64,000 nucleotides of DNA from Octopus sinensis (lineage: Eukaryota). Both the position numbers and the translations under genes were made by a program. The notes under the pieces were generated by a model. The model saw nothing but the letters and a program-made list of their open reading frames with translations. It had not been told where the DNA came from and made no database searches. Position 1 is the first letter of the stretch, and the number at the start of each line of letters is the position of its first letter. This document shows, one piece after another, positions 5,336 through 61,640 of this stretch. The stretch lies in the NCBI RefSeq assembly GCF_006345805.1, contig NC_043009.1, forward strand, positions 58,156,001-58,220,000, read 5' to 3'.

Positions 5336-5707
5336 AAGGCGGTGAGCTAGCAGAACCGTTAGCACGCCGGGCGAAATGCTTAGCGGTATTTCGTATGTCT
5401 TTACGTTCTTCGTTCAAACTCCTCCGCAGTCGACTTTGCCTTTCATCCTTTTGGGGTCAATAAATTAAGTGCCAGTTACGCACTGGGGTCGATGTAATCG
5501 ACTTAATACCTATGTCTGTCCTTGTTTGTCCCCTCTATGTTTAGCCCCTTGTGGGTAGTAAAGAAATAGGTATTTCGTCTGTCTTTTTGTTCTGAGTTCA
5601 AACTCCGCCGCGGTCGACTTTGCCTATCATCCTTTCGAGGTCGATAAAATAAGTACCAGTTGTGTACTGGGGTCGATCTAATCGACTGCCCCCCCCCACC
5701 CAAAAAC
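5336..5707 (+). mobile_element. SINE family A, head plus two tandem bodies
   Basis: Internal junction aaagaaataggtatttcgtc at ~5560-5580 returns to the mid-head sequence. Confidence 0.88.
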
Positions 5708-8023: not shown

Positions 8024-8613
8024 GGCACAAGGCCCGAAATTTTGTGGGAGGGGGCCAATCTATGAATTCGACTCCAGTACGCAACTATTTTTTAATTTAT
8101 TGAGCCCGAAAGGATGAAAGGCAAAGTCGACCTCGGCGGGATTTGAACTCAGAAAGTAAAAACTGAAGAAATACCGCTAAGTATCTCACCCGGCGTGCTA
8201 ACGTTTTTTATTTCTTTACTGCCCACAAGGAGGAGACAAACGCGGACAGACAAACGGATTAAGTCGATTATGTTGACCTCATGCGTAACTGGTACTTATT
8301 TAATCGACTACGAAAGCATGGAAGGCAAAGTCTATCCCGGCGGAATTTGAACTCAGAACGTAGCGGCACCTGGAAATACCTATTTCTTTACTACACACAA
8401 GAGGCTAAACACAGAGAGGACAAACAAGGACAGAGAAACGGATTGAGTCGATCATGTCGACCCCAGTTCGGAACTGGTACTTAATTTATCGACCTCGAAA
8501 GGATGAAAGGCAAAGTCAACCTCGGCGGAGTTTGCACTCAGAACGAAAAGACAGACGAAATACGGCGACGCATTTCGCCCGGCGTGCTAACGTTTCTGCC
8601 AGCTCGCCGCCTT
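8024..8613 (-). mobile_element. SINE family A cluster (dimer plus adjacent monomer)
   Basis: Three repeats of ggatgaaaggcaaagtc...aatttgaactcagaa; head ends ccagctcgccgcctt. Confidence 0.9.
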
Positions 8614-9582: not shown

Positions 9583-9801
9583 TATTTCTTTACTACCCAC
9601 AAGGGGCTAAACACAGAGGGGACAAACGGATTAAGTCAATTATATTGACCCTAGTGCGTAACTGGTACTTATTTAATCGACCCCGAAAGGACGAAAGGCA
9701 AAGCCGACCTCGGCGGAATTTGAACTCAGAACATAACCGCAGGCGAAATACTGCTAAGCATTTCGCCCGGCGTGCTAACGATTCTACCAGCTCACCGCCT
9801 T
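9583..9801 (-). mobile_element. SINE family A monomer with probable 15-bp TSD
   Basis: aaaaacctagattac at 9568-9582 and 9827-9841. Confidence 0.88.
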
Positions 9802-11237: not shown

Positions 11238-11848
11238 GACGAAATACCAATTTCTTTACTACCCACAAGGGGCTAAACACAGCGAGGATAAACAAGGACA
11301 GACAAACGGATTAAGTCGATTAGATCGCCCCCAGTGCGTAACTGATACTTATTTAATCGACTCCGAAAGGATGAAAGGCAAAGTCAACCTCGGCGGAATT
11401 TGGACTCAGAACGTAGTGACAAACGAAATATCTATTTCTTTACTACCCACAAGGGGTTAAACACAGAGGCGGCAAACAAGGACAGACAAACGGATCAAAT
11501 CAATAATATCGACCCCAGTGCGCAACTGGTACTTAATTTATCGACCCCGAAAGGATGAGAGGCAAAGTCAACATCGGCGGAATTTGAACTCAGAATGTAA
11601 CGGCATACGAAATACCTATTTCTTTACTAACCACAAGGGGCTAAAGATAGAGAGGACAAACAAGGACAGACATACGGATTAAATCAATTATATCGACCCC
11701 AGTGCGTAACTGGTTCTTAATTTATCGACCCTGAAAGGATGAAAGGTAAAGTCGACCTCGGCCGAATTTGAACTCAGAACGTAGCGGCAGACGAAATACA
11801 GCTAAGCATTTCGCCCGGCGTGGTAACGTTTCTGCCAGCTCGTCGCCA
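11238..11848 (-). mobile_element. SINE family A, head plus three 184-bp tandem bodies
   Basis: tttctttact recurs at 11251, 11435 and 11619 (period 184). Confidence 0.92.
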
Positions 11849-13492: not shown

Positions 13493-14181
13493 ACCATAAT
13501 TTCTCTGGACATGCAACCGTTCAGAGACAACTCGGTAATAATTAATTATATACAAAACTCGCTGTAACAACAATGTCATGACCAGAACTAGTTATGGTGT
13601 CGCACGACGCAGACCTTCTTCGATGATATTATTGACGTGGATATAACATTACGAAGATGGTGCTGCTGTTGCTGTCTTTGCAAAGGTAACGTTGGCGGTG
13701 AAGAGACAGCGGGTGCGTGAAACGGTTGTTTCGATCTCGTCTGCAAATAGCCACAGAGCAGCCATAGTGTCTGTCTGTACTAAAAGAGAGCGAATCGATA
13801 CGAATGCAAAGTGGGCGACTAAGCACCTAAAAATAAGTGAAGAGTATATGTTGTTGTCAATTTCCACATTTAATAGGAAAAAGGTTGCATATTTTTATGG
13901 TTATGTGTATATATATATATATTCATATACGTATATATTATATAATCACGTTTCCGTTTAGAATGTATATATATATATATATATATATAAAAGACGCGTC
14001 ATTCAGAGACATATCACTCACATCACCATTTCTGCTTTTCCTGCATTATTTGTGTGGCTTGATGAGCAAACACTAGCCGTTTATTTCGATTGCCATCATT
14101 TCCAAAAGTGTAGTTTCTTTTGTTTCCAATGACGACAAGTATTCCAGCCTACAATTATCGAAAATTTATTTATCGAAAATT

Positions 14182-15720
14182 AAAAAAGACACCACCATCA
14201 CCACAGATATATACTATAAACACACAGACACACATCAATACCTAAATTTTAAGTCGTGCCATCCACCACATACAAAACGTAACATCCCATACTGCCTAGC
14301 CAGAAGAATTTGTACTATTGTAGAAGATGCAAATATCAGGAACAAACGCCTAATAGAACTAAGAGAATTTTTGCTCAAACAAAAATACCCATCTCTACTT
14401 ATAGAAAATGGCATACAGCGGGCTATAAAAATACCTATACAACAACTTAGGACAACCCAAGGAAGAGGAAAACAAGAACAAGTCATACCATTCATAGTGA
14501 CACACACCCCATGTCACCAGAATATCTTCAACATTGCCAAAGCAAACCTACCAATCATTGCCCAAAGTAATGAATTAAAAGACATAATCACGGATCGAGC
14601 TATGGTGCTTAGTAAAAGACAGCCTAAAAACTTGAAAACATTACTAACAAAGGCAAAATTTGACCTCAGCAACAAAGACCAAACATTCACGGTATCTAAA
14701 TGCAATGATAGCCGATGTGGCACATGCCAATTCATACATACCGGTCAATATATAAACACAAAAACCGGGAAAATATTCACAAACGCGAATTGAACTGCAA
14801 AAGCAGAAATTTAATTTACTGCATCAAATGCCCAAATTGTGAAGAAATATATGTAGGTCAGACGGGAACGCACTATTAGAACGCTCACGTGTACACCGGC
14901 AACAGATTAGAGACCCAGAGGTCCGTCAGATACCTTTGAGTAACCACCTAGCAACATGTGGTCGGAAAATATATATAATATTTCCATTCTACAAATTACA
15001 CAGCCCAAGTGAAATCGAGAGGAAAATCAGAGAAAAGAATTTTATTGATAAATTCGAACCCAAGCTAAATAAGCAATAATAATAATAATAATACTTAGAG
15101 GTATTACTTCCACTGCTACGACCATGACCACTAACAACAACAACAATACTAAGGTGATCAAGACGAAGATAGCAGGAAAATTATCTTATTTAGGGTTAAA
15201 AGTTCTATTGCCACCACCATCACCACTAGCAACAATAATTAAGGTGCTGACAATGATGATGATGACAATTGAAATATAAAAATATAAAAATCTCTGACAA
15301 AGGGATTTTACAACATTTCTAAAAATAACCCAACAATTGCTGGCTTCGGCCAGGGTCAAGATACAGGACTCTTGACATGTCCAACAAAGCGTGATGCCTA
15401 ACCACATCAGCTCAACCAACCAATCAGCTTAAGTAATTGAGTGATACTACACACTGATTGGTCAGAATACAGTTTGCAAAACCTAGCACTCTGGAGCCTA
15501 CCCAGCTGTATTTATAGCACAGAATCAATCATCTTGCTACAGTCAAAAATTGTGAAGCATGACTGTCAACACTACTACATGAACCCGAAGATTGCAGATT
15601 CAATGCATGAAAGTACTAGTTCAATCAGAATGAATATTTACATTCTACTATTTCATTTTATTTTATTCAATTATAATATATTATCTTATAATATATCATT
15701 ATAAGATTGTAAATAAAACG
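14182..15720 (+). mobile_element. 5'-truncated Penelope-like element: RT thumb, linker, GIY-YIG endonuclease, 3' pLTR
   Basis: Open frame 14182-14793: KDTTITTDIYYKHTDTHQYLNFKSCHPPHTKRNIPY...KYP...SKRQPKNLKTLL...CNDSRCGTC. After frameshifts: NLIYCIKCPNCEEIYVGQTG...VHRQQIRDP...HLATC...KFEPKLNKQ* (stop 15077-15079). Hammerhead motif downstream. Confidence 0.92.
15580..15623 (+). ncRNA. Minimal type I hammerhead ribozyme motif in PLE 3' region (C3-G8, U4C)
   Basis: TGAAC-CCGAAGA-T-TGCA-gattcaa-TGCA-T-GAAA-GTAC-TA-GTTCA: 5-bp stem I, palindromic stem III, CUA site. Confidence 0.72.
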
Positions 15721-16515: not shown

Positions 16516-16824
16516 GCAAAGTCGACCACGGCGGAATTTGAACTGAGAACGTAAAGACAGACGAAATGCCGCTAAACATTTCGCCAGCGCGCTAACATTA
16601 CTTATTTCTCTATTACCCACAGGGGGCTAAACATAGAGGGGGCAAACAAGGACAGACAAAGGGATTAATTCGATTATTTCGACCCCAGTGCGTGACTAGT
16701 ACTTAATTTATCGACCCGGAAAGGATGAAAGGCAGAGTCAACCTCGGTGGAATTTGAACTCAGAACGTAGCGGCAGACGAAATACGGCTACGCATTTCGC
16801 CCGGCGTGCTAACGTTTCTGCCAG
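16516..16824 (-). mobile_element. SINE family A, two adjacent partial copies
   Basis: Two body/head segments in the minus orientation. Confidence 0.85.
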
Positions 16825-20808: not shown

Positions 20809-21028
20809 CTAAGGCGGTGAGCTGGTAGAAATGTTAGCACACCGGGCCAATGCTTAGCGGCGTTTCGTCTGTCTTTACGTTCTGAGTTCAAATTCCGTCG
20901 AGGCCGACTTTGCCTTCTATCCTTTCAGTGTCGATAAATTAAATACAAGTTGCGTTCTGGGGTTGATCTAATCGAGTGACCCCCTCCACCAAAATTTCAG
21001 GCCATGTGCCTACAGTAGAAAAGGAACG
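20809..21028 (+). mobile_element. SINE family A inserted in the PLE RT, 10-bp TSD
   Basis: taataatggg at 20799-20808 and 21029-21038. Confidence 0.9.
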
Positions 21029-22390
21029 TAATAATGGGATAATTTTGAATTCACTACATACGAAGTGCTATTGTAAAATATGGATATCCATTTTACCATT
21101 ATATAAGAGAAAACAAGAAAAGATATATTGATGACTGTTGTATCATTTGGAATGAAAGCATTGAGAAGCCTTTGGAATTTAAATCAATACTAAAGAATAT
21201 AAATTCTAACATTCAGTTTATAATGGAATATAGCAAACAACAGCTCCCTTTTTTACATATTCTGATTAAAATGTCAAAAAACAAATTGTAACTGAAATTT
21301 ATCATAAACCAACAGACTTGAAGCAATATATTCTGTTTATCTCATACCACTCGAAACGTATCAAAAGTAATATTTCCTTTAATTTAGTGAAAAATATTTG
21401 AACATTAGTGCCAAATGGAAATACACGGGACCTCCTTCTTTAAGACCTCAAAGCATCACTAACTGAGAGACACTGTCCACCCTCACTTATAGATGATGGA
21501 ATTAAACGGACCAAGAAATAGGCATTAAAACACAAAGGGAAACAAAACGAAACACCACGCCTCGTCTCAATATACTACCGCATGTATCAGCTCGCAAACC
21601 TAGGAACAATGAGGTGTACAAAACTATGATGCAAATTCTGACTAGAAATCCAAAAATGAACAACATTCTGAAAGCATATAGATTCTTCAAACGTAAAGAG
21701 CAACCTGAATCGCCGAAAACCTCCTGACAAATGTGAAGATTTACACAACAACCACGAAAATAGTGGTTACAAAATATGGACGTCCAAACTGTGGGAAATG
21801 CTCCAACCTACTGGAAGTCTTATAATTCCAATTCAAACAATTTCACTTGTGCATCCGAGAATTTACTTTATATTATAACTTGTTCAGGTTATGAACATAA
21901 CTATATAGGACAGACACGTATGGCACTTAGACGGAGAACTCCACTACATAAGGAACAGATCAAATTCCCAAATTATAGATAGATACATTAGGGCAAACAT
22001 ACAGAGAGATGTGCAGGGAATCTCCAATCAAATATCAATCATTTCCTTATCTACCAGTGAGAAGAAAGACTTTCTATGCGAGAACTTTTTAATAAAAAAC
22101 ATTTATTTATCGAAAAATACAGAACGGTTAACCAAACTTTGGTGACAATATGTATTTTAATTTATGACCACATATCCATCACTGTACATATTTCATCTCA
22201 CTACTTTAGTTTATAATTTTAGTTTATTTATCCCTCCCCAAAATGAGTAATTACCTTCCCTTTCCCGAGTAATAGCGCGATCACCAATTACCTCCCCTGA
22301 GATTTTTCTACTTTTTGAGTGTTTCACAAACTTTCATACAAGAACATGGCCTAAAATCGTCCAAAGAAAATACGAAATTACAATAACTTC

Positions 22391-31230: not shown

Positions 31231-32284
31231 AGCTGAAACGTTGTAAAGATTTAAATATATATATATATATATATATACATACAAACATAAAAGAGATACT
31301 CGAAGAATAGGATATCTGACTCGCTAGAAAGAGCAGTCAGATATCCTATTCTTCGGGTATCTCTTTTATATCTGAATGTACACTGTAGTATTCTCTGAAT
31401 AATATATAGTCTATTGACTATTTTTTTCTCGCTAGACCACTGGTAACTAAGAATTTTTCGATAAATATTCTTGTTACCCTAAGTTTTTAATTAATGATAA
31501 TATATATATATATAAGTGAAAAGAGGAGGGAAAGTGAGCATGAAGAGAAGGCAAGAAAATGTGAAAGTGGGGGAACGAAAGAATGAAGTAAGCGTGAAAG
31601 GGCTGATAAACAGAAGGAAAGAATGAAAGTAAAGAATAGAGTTGTAAAATATTTAGATAAATATATACTTACATATAAGAGACCAAAGTGTACGTACGCC
31701 GCTATATATATACATATATAATACAAAATGGGACAAGAACGTAAAACATCCAGACAGTTAGCTGACACAACAAAGGACAGTAAAACATCCAGATAGACGA
31801 TAAAAAGAAAACAAGGACGGGTCATTCGGAGTTTCCTTTCCTCAGTCGATTTCCAGATTATCTTTGCAAATTCGGCTGGTTATACGCGAGATTGCTCCAA
31901 TCTGGCCAACCCCAAGAAAAAATTAAGCAAAGTGCGAAAACAAGAACTGAAGAAAAACGGAGAATGTTACACAGATACAAATAACAGGACATAACACACA
32001 TACATACGTATACACACATGTGTATCAACACCTATAAATAAGTAAATGAATATATATTATATATACATACATACATAAATATATATATATATATATTTAT
32101 ATATGTATATTTGATCGAGAGAGACGGAAGATGGAAGTTACGAAAATGTTTATTAAGCACTATATATGCATACACACACACACACACTCAAACACACTCA
32201 TATGCATATATATGACTATATATATATATATATATATATTATTATATATATAACTTATACATATATGTACACACACATCTGCCC

Positions 32285-45348: not shown

Positions 45349-45573
45349 TATTTCTTTATTGCCCACAAGGGGCTAAACATAGAGGGGACAAATAAGGACA
45401 GACGAAGGGATTAAGTCGATTACAACGACCCCAGTGCGAAACTGGTACTTTATTTATCGACCCCGAAAGGATGAAAGGCAAAGTCGACCTCGGCGGAATT
45501 TGAACTCAGAACGTAGCGGCAGACGAAATAACGCTAAGCATTTCACCCGACGTGCTAACGATTCTGCCAGCTC
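45349..45573 (-). mobile_element. SINE family A monomer
   Basis: Collinear with 9583-9801. Confidence 0.9.
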
Positions 45574-47478: not shown

Positions 47479-48268
47479 ACCTTTTGTTACCGTATTTCTG
47501 TTGAGATGCTTCGTGTTTCTTTGAATTAATTTTAAATATAGCAAAGAATTTAGTAAAATATTGGGTTGTCTGGAAAGTTGGTGCCGATTTTTAAAGGAAA
47601 GAAAAAGGTCAATAAATACTTGCCCTTACATTTTTAATCAACCAAATATGGACCATTTTGTTGCACAATGCGTCTCCATCTTTCTTTTAACTTGAAAATA
47701 CCCTCTTCCCAGAATTGAGGTGGTTTCATGGCAAATAATTCATCAAGGTATCTTTTTACGTCATCCAAGGAATTGAAATTTTTAGCATTAAGACTATTCT
47801 GCAGAGACATGAATAAGTGGAAATCCGAAGGAGCAATATCTGGTGAATATGGAGGCTGCGGTAACACATCCCAGCCGAACTGCCGCAATTTTAGTCTAGT
47901 TCCCAAAGTATCAAGTGCCGAAAATGAACTTTCTTATCTTCCATTTTAAAGGGTTACAGAATTAACACAGGTTATAGGAACATAAACCTTCTTCCACGAA
48001 AAGACAGCTTATACTGTGCTCTAAATGAAGGTGTAGTCAAATCCTATTTTATGGACTCAACCATGTTCTGAAATAAGTCGAAATTTAAGCCACTATAAAT
48101 CGGCACGAACTTTCCGGACAACTCAATAGCATAGTTATCATTAAGCTAGTGTTACGGACATAAATTGTGACTAAGGTTTGGTGGAAGATTTTAATTCAGA
48201 ATTTTTGAAAACCAGCCATTTTTACTACAGAGCCAGAAGCATCTTCAGACGGAATGGCACCAAAGGGG
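47479..48268. mobile_element. piggyBac-like MITE (~220 bp net) split by a mariner insertion
   Basis: TTAA at 47475-47478 and 48269-48272; diverged termini accttttgttacc / ggcaccaaagggg. Confidence 0.5.
47561..48126 (-). mobile_element. Internally deleted mariner (566 bp) retaining the transposase C-terminus
   Basis: TIRs ttgggttgtctggaaagttggtgccgattt / aaatcggcacgaactttccggacaactcaa; TA both sides; ORF WDVLPQPPYSPDIAPSDFHLF...GIFKLKERWRRIVQQNGPY. Confidence 0.95.
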
Positions 48269-50820: not shown

Positions 50821-51456
50821 AAGGCGGCGAGCAGGCGGAAACGTTAGCACGCCGGGCGAAATGACTAGCAGTATTTCGTCTGTCTTTATGCTCTAAGTTC
50901 AAATTCCGCCGAGGTCGACTTTGCCTTTCATCCTTTCGGGGTCGATAAATTAATTACCAGTTACGCACTGGAGGTCGATATAATCGACTTAATCCGTTTG
51001 TCTGTTCTTGTTTGTCCCTTCTGTGTTTAGCCTCTTGTGGGCAGTAAAGAAATCGGTATTTCGTCTATCTTTACATTCTGAATTCAAAATCCGCAGAGGT
51101 CGACTTTGCCTTTCATCATTTCGGAGTCGATAAATTAAGTACCAGTTTCATACTGGGGTCGATCTAATCGACTGTCCCCCCTCCTCCCCCAAAATTTCAG
51201 GCCTTGTGCCTAGAGTAGAAAACAATATCATTAGTCCTAAAGCGGCGAGCTGGCAGAAACGTTAGCACACCGGGTGAAATGCCTAGCAGTATTTCGTCTG
51301 TCTTTACGTTCCGAGTTCAGATTCCGTCGAAGTCGACTATGCTTTTTATCATTTCGCGGTCGGTAATTTAAGTTCCAGTTACATACTAGAGTCGATCTAA
51401 TCGATTGCCCCACCTCCCCAAAATGTCGGGCCTTGTGCCTAGAATAGAAAAGAATA
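50821..51456 (+). mobile_element. Two adjacent SINE family A copies (dimer 50821-51225, monomer 51239-51456)
   Basis: Two heads a(a/g)gcggcgagc; t(a)(a/g)tcct precedes, separates and follows them. Confidence 0.9.
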
Positions 51457-53290: not shown

Positions 53291-53388
53291 AAATGTATAA
53301 ATATATATATATTATATATATATATATATCGATTATATACATTATATATATATATACATTATATATATATATACACACACACACACAA

Positions 53389-53422
<34 letters not shown>

Positions 53423-53663
53423 CTACATGTATTATATAATATATATATATAAATACATGTATATATATATTATATATAAATGTATATATACATCTATATA
53501 CATATATACGTATATGTATATCTATATGTATACATATATACCTCACAATCAAGGAACGGCCAAATAGGCCATTCACACCCTAGAAATAACAGCCAAAAGC
53601 TTCAACCGCAAAATAACATCATTTCCGTAAACCAGGAGAAAATTAAAAAACATTTACCCTGTA

Positions 53664-53769
53664 ATTTCTTATACGATGCACCGTTTCATCTACTGTTTAA
53701 TGGTAAACTAACCTGATTAAATTAAATCAAGCCAATCTTCCATAGGCCTTAGAATCATCAGTAAGAAAT
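53664..53769 (-). ncRNA. Type I hammerhead ribozyme, array unit 1
   Basis: ATTTCTTA-CTGATGA-[67 nt: T-TCTA...TAGA-T]-GAAA-CGGTGCATCG-TA-TAAGAAAT; predicted cleavage between 53672 and 53671. Confidence 0.85.
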
Positions 53770-54147
53770 AGCCAAGTCGGAACAGATTTTTCACGAGGCA
53801 CTTCCGACCCTGCCTCGGCAATATCTGACCTAAAATTTTCAAATCATCGCACTCGCGCCAAATTATCGGCAGCAAATAAATATAAGCCGCCGATTCCATT
53901 ACGGAATTAACCAGACAATTCATAATTAATCATATAGGGTGGCAAAAAATTTTGTAGAAATTTTTTGCCACCAGCGGCCTAGTGGGAAAAAATTAAATAG
54001 TCATAGACCATTTTTAAGTTCAACATCACAATCAAGGAACGGCCATAATAGGCCATTCACCCACTAGAAATAACAGCCAAAAGCTTCAACCGCAAAATAA
54101 CATCAATTCCGTAAACCAGGAGAAAATTAAAAAACATTTACCCTGTA

Positions 54148-54254
54148 ATTTCTTATACGATGCACCGTTTCATCTACTGTTTAATGGTAAACTAACCTGA
54201 TTAAATTAAATCAAGCCAATCTTCCATAGGCCCTTAGAATCATCAGTAAGAAAT
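54148..54254 (-). ncRNA. Type I hammerhead ribozyme, array unit 2
   Basis: Same motif, 68-nt stem II domain; cleavage 54156/54155. Confidence 0.85.
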
Positions 54255-54632
54255 AACCAAGTCGGAACAGATATTTTCACGAGGCATTTCCGACCCTGCC
54301 TCGGCAATATCTGACCTAAAATTTTCAAATCATCGCACTCGCGCCAATTATCGGCAGCAAATAAATATAAGCCGCCGATTCCATTACGGAATTAACCAGA
54401 AAATTCATAATTAATCAATATAGGGTGGCAAAAAATTTTGTAGAATTTTTTTGCCACCAGCGGCCTAGTGGGAAAAAATTAAATAGTCATAGACCATTTT
54501 TAAGTTCAACATCACAATCAAGAACGGCCATAATAGGCCATTCACCCACTAGAAATAACAGCCAAAAGCTTCAACCGCAAAATAACATCAATTCCGTAAA
54601 CCAGGAGAAAATTAAAAACCATTTACCCTGTA

Positions 54633-54738
54633 ATTTCTTATACGATGCACCGTTTCATCTACTGTTTAATGGTAAACTAACCTGATTAAATTAAATAAGC
54701 CAATCTTCCATAGGCCCTTAGAATCATCAGTAAGAAAC
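54633..54738 (-). ncRNA. Type I hammerhead ribozyme, array unit 3
   Basis: Core intact; 7-bp stem I; cleavage 54641/54640. Confidence 0.82.
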
Positions 54739-55113
54739 CAAGTCGGAACAGATATTTTCACGAGGCATTTCCGACCCTGCCTCGGCAATATCTGACCTAA
54801 AATTTTCAAATCATCGCACTCGCGCCAAATTTATCGGCAGCAAATAATATAAGCCGCCGATTCCATTACGGAATTAAACAGACAATTCATAATTAATCAA
54901 TATAGGGTGGCAAAAATTTTGTAGAATTTTTTTGCCACCAGCGGCCTAGTGGGAAAAAATTAAATAGTCATAGACCATTTTTAAGTTCAACATCACAATC
55001 AAGGAACGGCCATATAGGCCATTCACCCACTAGAAATAACAGCCAAAAGCTTCAACCGCAAAATAACATCAATTCCGTAAACCAGGAGAAAATTAAAAAC
55101 CATTTACCCTGTA

Positions 55114-55220
55114 ATTTCTTATACGATGCACCGTTTCAACTACTGTTTAATGGTAAACTAACCTGATTAAATTAAATCAAGCCAATCTTCCATAGGCCCT
55201 TAGAATCATCAGTAAGAAAT
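55114..55220 (-). ncRNA. Type I hammerhead ribozyme, array unit 4
   Basis: Core intact; one basal stem II pair lost (TAGTT before GAAA); cleavage 55122/55121. Confidence 0.8.
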
Positions 55221-55476
55221 AGCCAAGGCAGAACAGATATTTTCACGAGGCACTTCCGACCCTGCCTCGGCAATATCTGACCTAAAATTTTCAAATCATC
55301 GCACTCGCGCCAATTTATCGGCAGCAAAATAAATATAAGCCGCCGATTCCATTACGGAATTAACCAGAAAATTCATAATAATCAATATAGGGTGGCAAAA
55401 ATTTTGTAGAATTTTTTGCCACCAGCGGCCTAGTGGGAAAAATTAAATAGTCATAGACCATTTTTAAGTTCAACAT

Positions 55477-55537
<61 letters not shown>

Positions 55538-55615
55538 TACAGGTATATATATGCACATGCATACATATATATCTATATATCTGTGTGCGTGTGTATATAT
55601 AGATAGATAAATATA

Positions 55616-57279: not shown

Positions 57280-57455
57280 AAATCTAACATAGATTGAAAT
57301 GCAATAGATCGATACTCGGGTCATAATTATGGGTGACAATTTCATAGGACACCGCTTGAAAAAACTCCCATTTTCTCTAGCGGTGTCAAATGAAATTGTC
57401 ACCCATAATTATAACCCCAGTATCGATCTATTGCATTGCAATCTATTTTAGATTT
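57280..57455. mobile_element. Palindromic MITE (~176 bp)
   Basis: Arms aatgcaatagatcgatact..ggtcataattatgggtgacaatttcat..gacaccgct mirrored around a ~22-nt loop. Confidence 0.85.
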
Positions 57456-57985: not shown

Positions 57986-58969
57986 ATACACATCAACAGG
58001 GTATGTATGCATGTGTATGTATATGTGAGTGTGTGCGTTTGTATGTGCTTATGTATACGTGAAGATTTGTACGTTTGTTTTATATATGACTTATATATCT
58101 GCATATACACATACATACTTCTGGAAAGTTTTACAAATTTTTCAGTTCTAGTGATGGATTGGATCTATAGTCTTCGAATCAGCATTCTCCTTGTGGGTTT
58201 TGGGGAGACTAATTCCTCGATATTGTTATTTAGGTAGTGTATTACATATCCCAGGGCCTCAATTATTACAATTATAAAGCTGAACTCGTAATCTGCATTG
58301 AGGAACTGAAGATTTCTCAGATTGTATGCACGTATGTACGTATGTATGTATGTGTGTATGTATGTATGTATGTATGTATGTATTTGTATGAATGCATGTG
58401 TATATGTGTGCGTGGGTATCTTTGAGCATGTATATGCTTATGTAGATGTGTGATTGTATGTGTGTAATCCTTTCTCAACCTTGGAACGTTATTCCGCTGA
58501 CGATAATCAACAAAACACCAAAGAAATGTCACATTTCTCATCATTTTCACTTTTTCCTCTTGGTTCTATTTGGCCGTCCATTTTTGTTTATCTTCTTAGT
58601 TATTCCCCAATCTCTGTTGCGCATTTGTTTTTTTTTTTCTTATTCATTTTAAAATTCTCTTCTCATTTCTTCCAGCCTCCTACCTCAACCATTGTACATT
58701 CAATTCGTTTCCTTATTATTTTCTTTTAATTTCGTTCACGCTTAGAAATACATTCAGTCGTCATATGCATTTATTTATTCAAATATTAGAAGATTAGCTT
58801 TTTCTTTTTTTATAAAACTCAATTTCATCAAATATTGATAAGGATATCAGAAATGGAATAAAGATTGAATAAGAGGCAACGCGAAAATCGGAATAAACAA
58901 CTGAAAAAACGCAGTTCCATTTTTGATGTAGCATAATTAACTCTATTTATTGTGTACGTTTTGGCTGCG

Positions 58970-60009: not shown

Positions 60010-61640
60010 GTGTCTGCCAACTTTGTCATGGCGTGCTTGGAAGTCTAAATATACGAGCACGCTAGACTGAAATTTGGAAACAACTTCCAAAAATACTCAC
60101 CAACTGGAAACACTACCTGGATGACTGTTTCATAACAGTCTCATAAACATGAACAATTCTCAAAATTTAAATTCTTAATCAACAGTAATAACCAGAATAA
60201 CCATTTGCTACCCATAACATACTAAAATAAATACACCGTTCACCTTCCGAAGCCCGAGAAAAGCGACTCAAAGAATTTAAAAATACATTACTAGATAGAA
60301 AATACCTGACCAGTCTAATAAAAAATGGAATAGAACGCGCCAAATTGCCCACCAAAAATACAATCCCACATGTCAAAACATGCAACTGCCCTAACTGCAG
60401 AACTTGCATCTTCTTCTTAGAGGGCCCAACATACAAATTTCAGTCAGGTCAAAATTTTACCATAAAATATGACTTCACCTATGCTTCGAAGAACTTAATC
60501 TATGTTCTCAGATGTGGAGGTTGTAGCGGTGACTACATTGGTCAAACTAGCTTAACTTTGAGGGATAGGCTTACGGTACACAGGCAACAAATCCGGGACC
60601 CCACCACTAGGAGAATTCCCGTAAGCAAGCACCTAGACCAATGCCCCGCAGACAGAAACACTAAATTTCAAATATTCCTTTCTATCAATGCACTGGAAAC
60701 ACTTCAACCCAAATCTGTTTAAATAAGGAAAGCATACTGATTTAAAAATATAAACCACAGCTGAATATCGTTTAGAAAGAAGAAAAAGCAGTAAAAAGAA
60801 TAGAAAAAAAGATTCAATTCCAATAAAAAAAACAAAGGAGAACAGAAAATTTGTTTTGAAATCTTTAGTAACAATCTTCCATCCGGTTTCTGAAACCGCA
60901 ACTCCAAATCATCACACAAACACCAGTTGACGATGTCACCTACTTCTAGTCCAATGAAATTCTACAAACACCAGACCAATTAAAACCGAACTTAAACAAA
61001 AACAACGAAATGACCCTTTAAGAGAACCAACGAACCAGAACGACTTATGACCGTCTCCACAGGGAAACCAACCAAACATAACGACAAGCTTGACCACGGA
61101 ACAAAAAGCGTCACCAGTATTTTAACGAATCAAACATTAGATCTGCTCGCGTAAAAAATTATAAATACATCTGGTCCCACTACAAATAAAAGCGTCTACT
61201 AGAAGAGGATCAAAGAAACTGTAAACCAAATACCTTTTTTTAATATTTTCATTTTACCCTTGTTTTTTTCAGTATGACTTGCCGACCACCACTAATTTTA
61301 ATGAACTTTGTACTTTCAAACAAATTGATATTCAGTTTTAATATTATTGACTACTATGAACATTCAAACTTACACCTGTCCTCCAAATTCACAATGCTAA
61401 ATTTATCTGTTTTGAACGTGTTAATTTATCAACATCGAAACATTTAAAGATGTTTTTCTAATTCATAGTTTTAAACTTTTACTATTGATAAACAACATGT
61501 TTTTCAAATTCATAACTTTACACTTTTACCATTGATAAACAAAAAGATATTGTTGAAACTAGTTTGGTATATATGTAAATAAATGTATTTTAAAAATTTA
61601 CGGGTTTTTAAATTTAGGTGCATTTTCAACAACGTATTTT
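60010..61640 (+). mobile_element. Internally deleted Penelope-like element: RT fragments, GIY-YIG, 3' UTR/pLTR with hammerhead
   Basis: [20 protein letters not shown] (YLDD 60114-60125), CNCPNCRTC, KNLIYVLRCGGCSGDYIGQT..LRDRLTVHRQQIRDP...HLDQC, KYKPQLN. Confidence 0.9.
61527..61569 (+). ncRNA. Minimal type I hammerhead variant (U3-A8)
   Basis: TACCA-TTGATAA-ACAA-aaagata-TTGT-T-GAAA-CTAG-TT-TGGTA: perfect 5-bp stem I, palindromic CTAG, GUU site. Confidence 0.7.

What the first reader, a model, noticed from the sequence alone, without database searches (positions are those of the whole stretch)
53543..55480. Retrozyme-like tandem array: four ~483-bp units, each with a complete hammerhead ribozyme, predicted to release 481-485 nt monomers or circRNAs
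Seen: four head-to-tail units. On the minus strand each reads ATTTCTTA-CTGATGA-stem II-GAAA-CGGTGCATCG-TA-TAAGAAAT, i.e. all conserved hammerhead core nucleotides, a 7-8 bp stem I and a GUA site. Cleavage sites are 484, 485 and 481 nt apart and no ORF is conserved. Established: tandem type I hammerhead repeats in animals (newt satellite 2, Schistosoma Sm-alpha, cave-cricket pDo500, Mytilus and Acropora non-LTR retrozymes) are transcribed and self-cleave, and several have been shown to form circRNAs; mobilisation by Penelope-like elements has been proposed. Inference: this is a cephalopod member of that class, at the large end of the size range, lying among potential helper PLEs. I do not recall an octopus example but cannot check the literature.
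Basis: partly seen in the sequence, partly recalled or inferred. Interest (0 to 1): 0.95.

Follow-up and report, generated by a model that had tools for sequence, protein, structure and literature searches.

The report
Octopus hammerhead-ribozyme tandem repeat (retrozyme)
Four head-to-tail copies of a ~484-bp non-coding repeat, each with a full hammerhead self-cleaving RNA motif, are most likely an octopus example of the already known "non-LTR retrozyme" class of small mobile elements that make circular RNAs: a sound find, but not a surprising one.

Summary
Window 53543-55480 is a 4.0-copy, 485-bp, 97%-identical tandem array. On the minus strand every unit carries CUGAUGA / GAAAC / GUA in type I hammerhead order. 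Helix I is 8 bp. Helix II is long (~67 nt). Helix III is 4 bp. The predicted cuts lie 481, 485 and 484 nt apart. A structural descriptor that recovers the experimentally validated coral and mussel retrozyme ribozymes gives 0.037 loose hits per random 64 kb, and no strict hit in 300 simulations. The unit is AT-rich (37% GC), has no conserved ORF, folds far better than shuffles (z = -6) and sits inside a (TA)n microsatellite, the preferred target reported for some Penelope-like elements (PLEs). This fits the published definition of animal non-LTR retrozymes.

Caveats: Rfam's hammerhead models do not detect it. Helix II opens with a U·U mismatch, doubled in unit 1. The 12-nt self-complementary helix III suggests cleavage as a double hammerhead. 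The three PLE copies in the window are truncated, dead fragments. Published retrozymes span 51-972 bp, so 483 nt is not extreme. No homologues, transcripts or cleavage data could be reached.

Verdict: new (cephalopod) member of a known kind; moderate-to-low interest.

The parts
53543..55480 (-). Tandem array of four ~484-bp units. In RNA sense it reads TGTGA + 4 x [TGTTGAAC...CCTTGATTGTGA], i.e. 4 units plus a 5-nt terminal redundancy. Unit limits are about 55480-54997, 54996-54512, 54511-54028 and 54027-53543.
   Evidence: TRF; alignment; sequence; nhmmer
55114..55220 (-). Hammerhead motif of unit 1 (C3 at 55212, G12 at 55137, A17 at 55122, cut 55122|55121). The base of helix II has two consecutive U.U mismatches (UAGUU), so this copy is probably impaired.
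54633..54738 (-). Hammerhead motif of unit 2 (C3 at 54730, A17 at 54641, cut 54641|54640). A 3-nt deletion lies 5' of helix I and a 1-nt deletion in the distal helix II stem.
54148..54254 (-). Hammerhead motif of unit 3, identical to the consensus (C3 at 54246, A17 at 54156, cut 54156|54155). Helix I is 8 bp. Helix II is U.U + UCUA/UAGA + internal loop + AUGG/CCAU + a 14-bp stem. Helix III is ACGG/UCGU with a UGCA loop.
53664..53769 (-). Hammerhead motif of unit 4 (C3 at 53761, A17 at 53672, cut 53672|53671). A 1-nt deletion lies in the internal loop of helix II.
54421..54458 (-). 12-bp hairpin GGUGGCAAAAAA/UUUUUUGCCACC, present in every unit (unit 3 copy given). A diverged copy at 31442-31478 keeps the hairpin through changes on both arms.
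53296..53540 (.). Imperfect (TA)n microsatellite abutting the array on its low-coordinate side, separated from it by GG on the minus strand.
55481..55580 (.). (TA)n microsatellite directly abutting the array on its high-coordinate side.

Best explanation
This is a genomic copy of an octopus non-LTR retrozyme: a non-autonomous, non-coding retroelement that exists as a head-to-tail array, with a type I hammerhead ribozyme in each unit.

Proposed working, with each step marked:
1. The minus strand is transcribed as a multimer (inferred; no promoter identified).
2. Each hammerhead cuts after GUA (A17). It probably works best as a double hammerhead, in which the 12-nt self-complementary helix III of two motifs pair with each other. 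The motif, its geometry and the pairing energies are shown; catalysis is inferred.
3. This releases 481-485-nt monomers with 5'-OH and 2',3'-cyclic phosphate ends. Helices I and III hold the ends together, and a host RtcB-type ligase or the ribozyme itself seals them into a compact circular RNA (inferred by analogy with coral, mussel and axolotl retrozymes, PMC7229834).
4. The RNA is copied in trans by the reverse transcriptase/GIY-YIG endonuclease of an autonomous Penelope-like element and inserted as a tandem cDNA into a (TA)n microsatellite. The (TA)n context and the presence of PLEs in the genome are shown; the mechanism is inferred.

The copy seen here is moderately young. Its units are 97% identical, and three of the four ribozymes meet the full structural descriptor.
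For: - Array geometry and identity.
- All core nucleotides are present (CUGAUGA, GAA, A15.1-U16.1, A17), with C15.2-G16.2 and U1.1-A2.1, in type I order in all four units.
- Chance: the descriptor gives 0.037 loose hits per random 64 kb and no strict hit in 300 simulations, and it finds the validated coral and mussel retrozyme ribozymes.
- Folding of the ribozyme: the hammerhead fold of the 107-nt motif is within 3.4 kcal/mol of the minimum free energy (MFE), and helices I and II are part of the MFE.
- Helix III: it dimerises at -19.5 kcal/mol against -1.2 for the hairpin. This matches the dimer-dependent newt and axolotl ribozymes.
- The U.U at the helix II base: the axolotl HHR_Amex2 retrozyme has the same mismatch and the same GUA site, and it cleaves (22% in 1 h as a monomer, far better as a dimer; PMC7229834).
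- Monomer properties: circular MFE -143.9 kcal/mol against -109.8 +/- 5.6 for shuffles, z = -6.1, 60% paired. GC is 37%, identical to the mussel retrozyme Mg353. There is no conserved ORF, no tRNA-like part and no LTRs.
- Insertion site: the array sits inside a (TA)n tract, while only 4.6-6.5% of the window is such sequence. (TA)n is a reported preferred target of PLE endonucleases, and it obscures target-site duplications (PMC8557442).
- PLEs in the genome: canonical C-terminal GIY-YIG PLEs with the CX2-5CxxC linker are present.
- Array size: a 4-unit array and a 484-bp unit fall inside the published ranges, 51-972 bp with 75% of families having at most 7 units.
Against: - Rfam's hammerhead covariance models do not report it, either at gathering score or at E<=10 on 123 nt. 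The ~67-nt helix II is the likely reason, but this was not shown.
- The 10.1/11.1 pair is U.U instead of the usual G-C, and the canonical loop 1/loop 2 tertiary contact cannot be identified, so activity may be low.
- Only one locus is known. No second full copy exists in the window or in 20.7 kb of O. sinensis, and none could be retrieved elsewhere. Mobility and conservation are therefore unproven.
- The core shows no fewer changes than the rest of the unit, so there is no evidence of selection after insertion.
- The array ends are in phase (4 units + 5 nt) and do not coincide with the cleavage site. Simple rolling-circle copying with random start and stop does not predict this.
- No similarity was found to sequences flanking the PLE remnants.
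Confidence: 0.75

Rival explanations
1. Dead relic: the array descends from a retrozyme but is now an inert genomic fossil. The ribozyme is crippled by the U.U mismatch (doubled in unit 1) and by an overgrown helix II. The locus is not transcribed, so no monomers or circles are made from it.
For: U.U at 10.1/11.1 in all units, plus a second U.U in unit 1. No Rfam match. There are 7-14 substitutions and 5-10 indel columns between units, with no sparing of the ribozyme. No promoter was identified. All PLE copies in the window are degraded.
Against: All 15 core positions, helix I and helix III are intact in all four units. A U.U-based helix II is compatible with cleavage in the axolotl retrozyme. 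97% identity between units argues against great age.
Confidence: 0.15
2. Piece of a Penelope-like element: the repeat is a tandemised pseudo-LTR (pLTR) of an autonomous PLE insertion, not an independent non-autonomous element.
For: PLE pLTRs carry type I hammerheads and PLEs insert as complex tandem or inverted structures (PMC8557442). A 2026 preprint finds vertebrate retrozymes to be sister to PLE pLTRs. A PLE GIY-YIG fragment lies 4.8 kb away at 60318-60644.
Against: No PLE coding sequence adjoins the array; both flanks are (TA)n. The nearest PLE remnant is on the opposite strand. No sequence similarity exists between the unit and anything next to the three PLE remnants. The hammerhead has long helices I-III, unlike the 'minimal' PLE variants described in PMC7229834.
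Confidence: 0.07
3. Ordinary minisatellite with a hammerhead look-alike: a locally duplicated 485-bp segment, expanded for example by slippage on the 5-nt TGTGA redundancy, that matches the motif by chance.
For: Single locus. In-phase array ends with a 5-nt direct repeat. No covariance-model support. No comparative evidence.
Against: Expected loose descriptor hits in a 485-bp unit on both strands are about 3e-4, and no strict hit occurred in 300 random 64-kb windows. On top of the 11 fixed core bases, the motif comes with an 8-bp helix I, a 4-bp helix III, a stable helix II and an A-U/C-G closing stack. The architecture is exactly that in which animal hammerheads are known to occur.
Confidence: 0.03

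Closest known systems
Invertebrate non-LTR retrozymes (Mytilus galloprovincialis ~350-390-bp repeats; Acropora millepora 220-240-bp repeats; Cervera & de la Pena 2020, PMC7229834)
   Same: Head-to-tail arrays of a short, AT-rich (mussel Mg353 37% GC, here 37%), non-coding unit. One type I hammerhead per unit with CUGANGA/GAAAY/RUH. The monomer is predicted to be highly self-paired. PLEs co-occur in the genome. Same phylum (Mollusca) as the mussel element.
   Different: No sequence similarity to the mussel or coral units. Helix II is ~67 nt instead of 13 nt and starts with U.U instead of G-C. Helix I is 8 bp instead of 6. The unit is ~100 nt longer. Expression, cleavage and circles have been shown for mussel and coral but not here.
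Axolotl retrozyme Rtz_353 with HHR_Amex2 (PMC7229834)
   Same: U.U mismatch at the base of helix II, a GUA cleavage triplet, and a self-complementary helix III (ACACGUGU there, ACGGUGCAUCGU here), which implies cleavage as a double hammerhead. Tandem non-coding repeats.
   Different: Vertebrate, 51% GC, 350-bp unit, short helix II, ~60,000 copies. Unrelated in sequence, so the shared ribozyme peculiarities are parallel rather than inherited.
Classical animal hammerhead satellites (newt satellite 2, Schistosoma Sm-alpha, cave-cricket pDo500); named from established knowledge, not examined here
   Same: Tandem repeats that encode type I hammerheads and are transcribed into self-cleaving multimers. 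They are now regarded as retrozymes (PMC7229834).
   Different: Different lineages and unit sizes. Their activity is experimentally established.
Minimal hammerheads in pseudo-LTRs of Penelope-like elements (Cervera & de la Pena 2014, as cited in PMC7229834 and PMC8557442)
   Same: Type I topology, dimer-prone helix III, association with PLE biology, and a microsatellite insertion context.
   Different: Those motifs lie in the terminal repeats of a coding element and have very short helices. Here no PLE ORF is attached and all three helices are long.
Plant LTR retrozymes (PMC4918200)
   Same: Non-autonomous retroelements that propagate through hammerhead-processed circular RNA.
   Different: Type III hammerheads within LTRs, with a primer binding site and polypurine tract, GC above 55%, 600-1000 nt, mobilised by Ty3/gypsy elements. 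None of these features is present here.

Membership tests
Hammerhead ribozyme, type I | Conserved catalytic core C3 U4 G5 A6 N7 G8 A9 / G12 A13 A14 / A15.1-U16.1 / H17 (criterion CUGANGA / GAAAY / RUH of PMC7229834) | tested here: met
   CUGAUGA / GAAAC / GUA in all four units.
Hammerhead ribozyme, type I | Three helices around the core, with helix I open-ended (5' and 3' ends in helix I) | tested here: met
   Helix I is 8 bp and open. Helix II is closed (~67 nt, -26 kcal/mol local fold, z = -2.8). Helix III is a 4-bp hairpin. The hammerhead fold is 3.4 kcal/mol above the MFE.
Hammerhead ribozyme, type I | Watson-Crick pair (usually G-C) at 10.1/11.1 at the base of helix II | tested here: not met
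   U.U in all units, and U.U + U.U in unit 1. This pair is frequent but not obligatory: axolotl HHR_Amex2 has U.U and cleaves.
Hammerhead ribozyme, type I | Tertiary contact between loop 1 (in helix I) and loop 2 | tested here: inconclusive
   No canonical loops are present. An internal loop lies 5 positions up helix II, and the end of the 8-bp helix I could substitute for them, but nothing here tests that. Mussel retrozyme hammerheads also lack most of the canonical contact nucleotides.
Hammerhead ribozyme, type I | Site-specific self-cleavage giving 5'-OH and 2',3'-cyclic phosphate ends | not testable with these tools
   Needs in vitro transcription or RNA end mapping.
Rfam hammerhead families (Hammerhead_1 RF00163 and relatives) | Covariance-model score at or above the gathering threshold | tested here: not met
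   No hammerhead match at gathering score on the whole window. None at E<=10 on 3 kb or on the 123-nt motif alone.
Animal non-LTR retrozyme | Short head-to-tail tandem repeats (reported as 150-450 bp, later 51-972 bp), from dimers to multimers | tested here: met
   4.0 copies of 484-485 bp at 97% identity; published ranges.
Animal non-LTR retrozyme | One type I hammerhead per repeat unit, so that cleavage yields unit-length RNA | tested here: met
   One motif per unit; cut sites 481/485/484 nt apart.
Animal non-LTR retrozyme | Non-coding, low GC (<45-50%), no LTR, primer binding site or polypurine tract | tested here: met
   GC 37%. No ORF shared by the units. The flanks are microsatellites, not LTRs. 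No tRNA-like element. A primer binding site and polypurine tract were not searched for explicitly.
Animal non-LTR retrozyme | Monomer RNA predicted to be highly self-paired | tested here: met
   Circular MFE -143.9 kcal/mol, z = -6.1 against 100 dinucleotide shuffles, 60% of bases paired. The complementary strand is also structured (z = -7.7), so this does not identify the strand.
Animal non-LTR retrozyme | Dispersed multi-copy family (evidence of transposition; target-site duplications when visible) | tested here: inconclusive
   Only one array in 64 kb + 20.7 kb of octopus DNA. One weak, hammerhead-less partial relative at 31406-31495. Insertion inside (TA)n fits transposition but hides any target-site duplication. 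No cephalopod genome could be searched by DNA.
Animal non-LTR retrozyme | Co-occurrence with autonomous Penelope-like elements in the genome | tested here: met
   Three PLE remnants in the window (RT thumb, CX2-5CxxC linker, GIY-YIG). Homologues carry RVT_1 + HTH_animal + GIY-YIG; the best hit is Octopus sinensis. No intact PLE was seen.
Animal non-LTR retrozyme | Expression as linear and circular unit-length RNA | not testable with these tools
   No transcriptome could be searched by nucleotide sequence. Six-frame protein look-ups for ORF calls on transcript contigs found nothing.
PLE pseudo-LTR | Repeat flanks a PLE RT/GIY-YIG ORF, or is homologous to PLE termini | tested here: not met
   No PLE coding sequence lies within 4.8 kb. 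There is no similarity between the unit and the sequences around the three PLE remnants. Intact octopus PLE termini were not available.

The most novel reading that the evidence does not exclude
The octopus element may define a cephalopod retrozyme lineage with two unusual properties. First, its hammerhead has a very long, internally looped helix II and works only as a double hammerhead. Second, its in-phase array ends (TGTGA + exactly 4 units) inside (TA)n may record site-specific initiation and termination of PLE-type reverse transcription on a circular template. That would give a concrete handle on the still unknown mobilisation mechanism of animal retrozymes. If the ~483-nt, 60%-paired circle is abundant in octopus tissues, it would also be an obvious substrate or sink for the very active cephalopod ADAR editing system.
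Probability: 0.1. Interest if true: 0.55.

Novelty: new member of a known kind. Interest (0 to 1): 0.3.

Why it matters
If it is confirmed in transcripts, octopus would join coral, mussel and salamanders as animals that make abundant small circular RNAs through a ribozyme rather than through back-splicing. That would extend the class to cephalopods, for which the searchable literature holds no hammerhead or retrozyme report.

The element also offers:
- a natural hammerhead with a U.U-based, ~67-nt helix II and a 12-nt dimerisation helix III, useful for asking how much helix II variation the ribozyme tolerates;
- a clean insertion into (TA)n with in-phase ends, relevant to how PLE enzymes might copy circular templates.

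None of this overturns current understanding. It adds one lineage and some structural variation to a class already described as widespread in invertebrates.

Tried and rejected
1. Rfam. No hammerhead match at gathering score or at E<=10 on 3 kb and on 123 nt. The miRNA-like matches there are (TA)n artefacts. I could not submit a helix-II-trimmed sequence to test whether the long insertion is the cause.

2. External homologues by DNA. Two exact-pattern scans of metagenome contigs and one of viral contigs gave 0 hits. These collections are not expected to hold cephalopod DNA.

3. External homologues through spurious ORF calls. The 104-aa plus-strand ORF and a six-frame translation of two units, searched against 5.8 billion proteins, found nothing. 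The repeat has not been called as protein anywhere in that collection.

4. O. sinensis. I fetched 20.7 kb around the best PLE hit. It holds no copy of the unit.

5. Other hammerheads in the window, for example next to the PLE remnants. None beyond the array. A looser first pass gave one obviously spurious hit at 58306 with a 210-nt 'helix II'.

6. Relation of the unit to PLE flanks (the pLTR hypothesis). No similarity.

7. tRNA- or SINE-like origin. ARAGORN finds nothing.

8. Selection on the ribozyme within the array. With about 2% divergence, too few changes exist to tell.

9. Terminal inverted repeats around the array. Only microsatellite self-matches.

10. Pfam on the PLE ORFs. Only weak GIY-YIG matches below cut-off. 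PLE identity rests on homologues and tblastn.
Full report
**1. The observation**

Tandem Repeats Finder reports one array at 53543-55480 with period 485, 4.0 copies, 97% matches and 1% indels. The four units align with 97% mean column identity. No other full copy exists in the window (blastn; nhmmer with a profile of the four units).

Read on the minus strand, each unit contains ATTTCTTA-CTGATGA-[67-68 nt]-GAAA-CGGTGCATCG-TA-TAAGAAAT. Unit 2 lacks 3 nt just upstream and reads GG---TTTCTTA. The exact landmarks are:
- C3 lies at 55212, 54730, 54246 and 53761.
- A17 lies at 55122, 54641, 54156 and 53672.
The absolute values printed were one too high; the spacing was right.

ORFs in the array differ from unit to unit because of indels, and none is shared by all four.

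**2. Is the motif more than chance?**

I wrote a structural descriptor in the style used in the field. It requires:
- CUGANGA;
- a helix II of 8-120 nt with at least 4 of its 5 basal positions paired;
- GAAA;
- a helix III hairpin;
- U16.1 followed by a non-G at position 17;
- at least 5 contiguous helix I pairs.

In the window it finds only units 2, 3 and 4. Unit 1 fails because an A-to-T change turns the base of helix II into two consecutive U.U mismatches.

In 300 first-order-Markov random windows, both strands, the descriptor gave a mean of 0.037 hits. None had helix I of at least 8 bp together with helix III of at least 3 bp. That is about 3e-4 expected loose hits in one 485-bp unit.

As a positive control, the same script finds the hammerheads of the cloned, experimentally self-cleaving coral (Amil224) and mussel (Mg353) retrozymes, whose sequences are in the supplement of PMC7229834. 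It misses the two axolotl ribozymes, which have very weak helices II/III and are known to need dimerisation.

**3. Anatomy of the ribozyme**

- **Core.** C3-A9 = CUGAUGA, G12-A14 = GAA, A15.1-U16.1, C15.2-G16.2, A17, U1.1-A2.1. All are present in all units. This meets the published criterion CUGANGA/GAAAY/RUH.
- **Helix I.** AUUUCUUA/UAAGAAAU, 8 bp, open-ended, which makes the motif type I.
- **Helix III.** ACGG/UCGU closed by UGCA.
- **Helix II.** It is unusual. It starts with U10.1.U11.1, then UCUA/UAGA, an internal loop, AUGG/CCAU and a 14-bp stem. The total is ~67 nt. It forms in the local MFE (-26.1 kcal/mol, z = -2.8).
- **Energetics.** Forcing the full hammerhead fold on the 107-nt motif costs only 3.4 kcal/mol relative to the MFE (-25.8 against -29.2). 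Helices I and II are already in the MFE.
- **Dimerisation.** The 12 nt ACGGUGCAUCGU are self-complementary. Two motifs can form an intermolecular helix III worth -19.5 kcal/mol, against -1.2 for the hairpin.

The combination of a U.U at the base of helix II, a GUA site and a palindromic helix III also occurs in the axolotl HHR_Amex2 retrozyme. That ribozyme cleaves 22% in an hour as a monomer and much better in dimeric constructs (PMC7229834). I therefore expect cleavage mainly as a double hammerhead, which the tandem arrangement provides.

Against this, Rfam's covariance models give no hammerhead match at gathering score, at E<=10 on 3 kb, or on the 123-nt motif alone. The long helix II is the probable reason, but I could not test a trimmed sequence. 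No canonical loop 1/loop 2 contact can be named.

**4. The rest of the unit**

GC content is 37%, the same as the mussel Mg353 retrozyme. As a circle, the 485-nt monomer folds to -143.9 kcal/mol, against -109.8 +/- 5.6 for dinucleotide shuffles (z = -6.1), with 60% of bases paired. The antisense strand is also structured (z = -7.7). The circle folded is identical to the true monomer, because the one-base offset only swaps one A17 for another.

A 12-bp hairpin (GGUGGCAAAAAA/UUUUUUGCCACC) is a prominent element. There is no tRNA-like part, and Rfam finds no ribozyme of any other class on either strand.

**5. Context**

The array is embedded in an imperfect (TA)n microsatellite (53296-53540 and 55481-55580). 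Only 4.6-6.5% of the window is such sequence.

In RNA sense the array reads (TA)n-TGTGA-[TGTTGAAC...GATTGTGA]x4-GG-(TA)n. That is exactly four units plus a 5-nt terminal redundancy, and the ends lie about 130 nt from the cleavage site. Simple rolling-circle copying with random start and stop does not predict in-phase ends. They suggest either defined initiation and termination sites or later DNA-level amplification. This remains unexplained.

Craig et al. (PMC8557442) report two relevant points. (TA)n is a preferred target of Naiad PLEs, which hides target-site duplications. The CX2-5CxxC linker of Neptune-type endonucleases has been proposed to mediate microsatellite targeting.

The window contains three PLE remnants on the plus strand: 14137-15073, 21025-22015 and 60318-60644. 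They carry an RT thumb, such a Cys linker (CNDSRCGTC, CNCPNCRTC) and GIY-YIG. All are 5'-truncated and frameshifted. Their homologues carry RVT_1 + HTH_animal + GIY-YIG, and the best is an Octopus sinensis protein at 77% identity, followed by bivalve proteins. Interspersed repeats of the window match an O. sinensis chromosome at ~87%.

So the source is an octopus or a close relative. PLEs of the canonical C-terminal-endonuclease type live in this genome, but nothing in the window could itself act as a helper. The unit shows no similarity to sequences around these remnants.

**6. Comparison with what is known**

Animal non-LTR retrozymes are defined in PMC7229834 by these features:
- short tandem repeats (150-450 bp);
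- low GC;
- no LTR, primer binding site or polypurine tract, and no ORF;
- one type I hammerhead per unit;
- expression as highly self-paired linear and circular RNAs;
- co-occurrence with PLEs.

They were described 'from molluscs to arthropods'. A 2026 preprint (10.64898/2026.07.22.740005) extends consensus lengths to 51-972 bp and finds that 75% of families have at most seven units. It also argues that retrozymes derive from PLE pseudo-LTRs.

The octopus array meets every sequence-level criterion. Expression, cleavage, circularisation and multi-locus distribution could not be tested. Full-text searches found no report of a hammerhead or retrozyme in any cephalopod. Only open-access papers and preprints were searched.

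**7. What failed**

No homologue could be obtained:
- DNA pattern scans of metagenomic and viral contigs gave nothing.
- Protein-space searches with the longest ORF, and with a six-frame translation of two units, gave nothing.
- 20.7 kb of O. sinensis holds no copy.

The only relative is a ~95-nt stretch at 31406-31495 (plus strand). It aligns to unit positions ~19-112 (nhmmer E = 4.7e-4 with high compositional bias). It keeps the long hairpin through changes on both arms (GG>AA with CC>UU, A>G with U>C). It lies in a ~235-bp structured insert that is again bracketed by (TA)n, and it has no hammerhead.

**8. Verdict**

- Best reading (0.75): a genomic array of an octopus non-LTR retrozyme with a type I hammerhead that probably acts as a dimer.
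- Rivals: an inert relic of such an element (0.15); a tandemised PLE pseudo-LTR (0.07); a chance motif in an ordinary minisatellite (0.03).
- Novelty: a new member of a known kind.
- Interest: about 0.3. The find is solid, directly testable and apparently a first for cephalopods, but specialists would expect it.

Noticed in passing
window 31262-31500 (+): A ~235-bp highly structured insert lies between two short (TA)n tracts. Its 5' part is a near-perfect ~35-bp hairpin (MFE -63.6 kcal/mol, z = -11.6). Its 3' ~95 nt (31406-31495) align weakly to positions ~19-112 of the hammerhead repeat and keep that unit's long hairpin through compensatory changes. It has no hammerhead core. It may be a diverged fragment of a related element, or a module shared between elements.
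   Followed up: partly
window 53541-53548 and 55474-55482: The array ends are in phase. The array is TGTGA plus exactly four units, and the ends lie ~130 nt from the ribozyme cut site. Random rolling-circle start and stop points would not give this. It points to defined initiation and termination, or to later DNA-level amplification.
   Followed up: partly
window 14137-15073, 21025-22015, 60318-60644 (all +): Three 5'-truncated, frameshifted remnants of canonical (C-terminal GIY-YIG) Penelope-like elements with a CX2-5CxxC linker. The best protein match is Octopus sinensis LOC115230173 (77%), then oyster and pearl-oyster proteins. No hammerhead motif was found next to any of them.
   Followed up: yes
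window 11239-11799 and at least 14 further sites (e.g. 1573-1747, 5396-5687, 8068-8553, 9584-9735, 16516-16770, 20870-20975, 45350-45516, 50881-51404): A ~184-bp SINE-like interspersed repeat, 76-88% identical between copies. It is present once as a 3-copy tandem (11239-11799). It is by far the most frequent repeat in the window.
   Followed up: partly
window 57280-57455: A palindromic element with two 85-nt arms, 91% complementary, 6 nt apart. It matches O. sinensis locus L001 6827-7112 in both orientations at 84-87%, so it is a MITE-like foldback repeat shared between the two sequences.
   Followed up: no
window 47637-47933 (-): A 99-aa open frame with the PYSPDIAPSDFHLF signature of a mariner/Tc1-type transposase C-terminus. 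It is a DNA-transposon remnant.
   Followed up: no
whole window: Extreme microsatellite load: 151 perfect (TA)>=5 tracts covering 4.6% of the window, plus long (TAA)n, (AAT)n, (TATC)n and (TG)n arrays. No ORF over 202 aa and no tRNA gene, so this is intergenic or intronic repeat-rich DNA. The TA tracts give spurious sub-threshold 'miRNA' matches (mir-297, mir-3149 and others) in permissive Rfam searches.
   Followed up: partly
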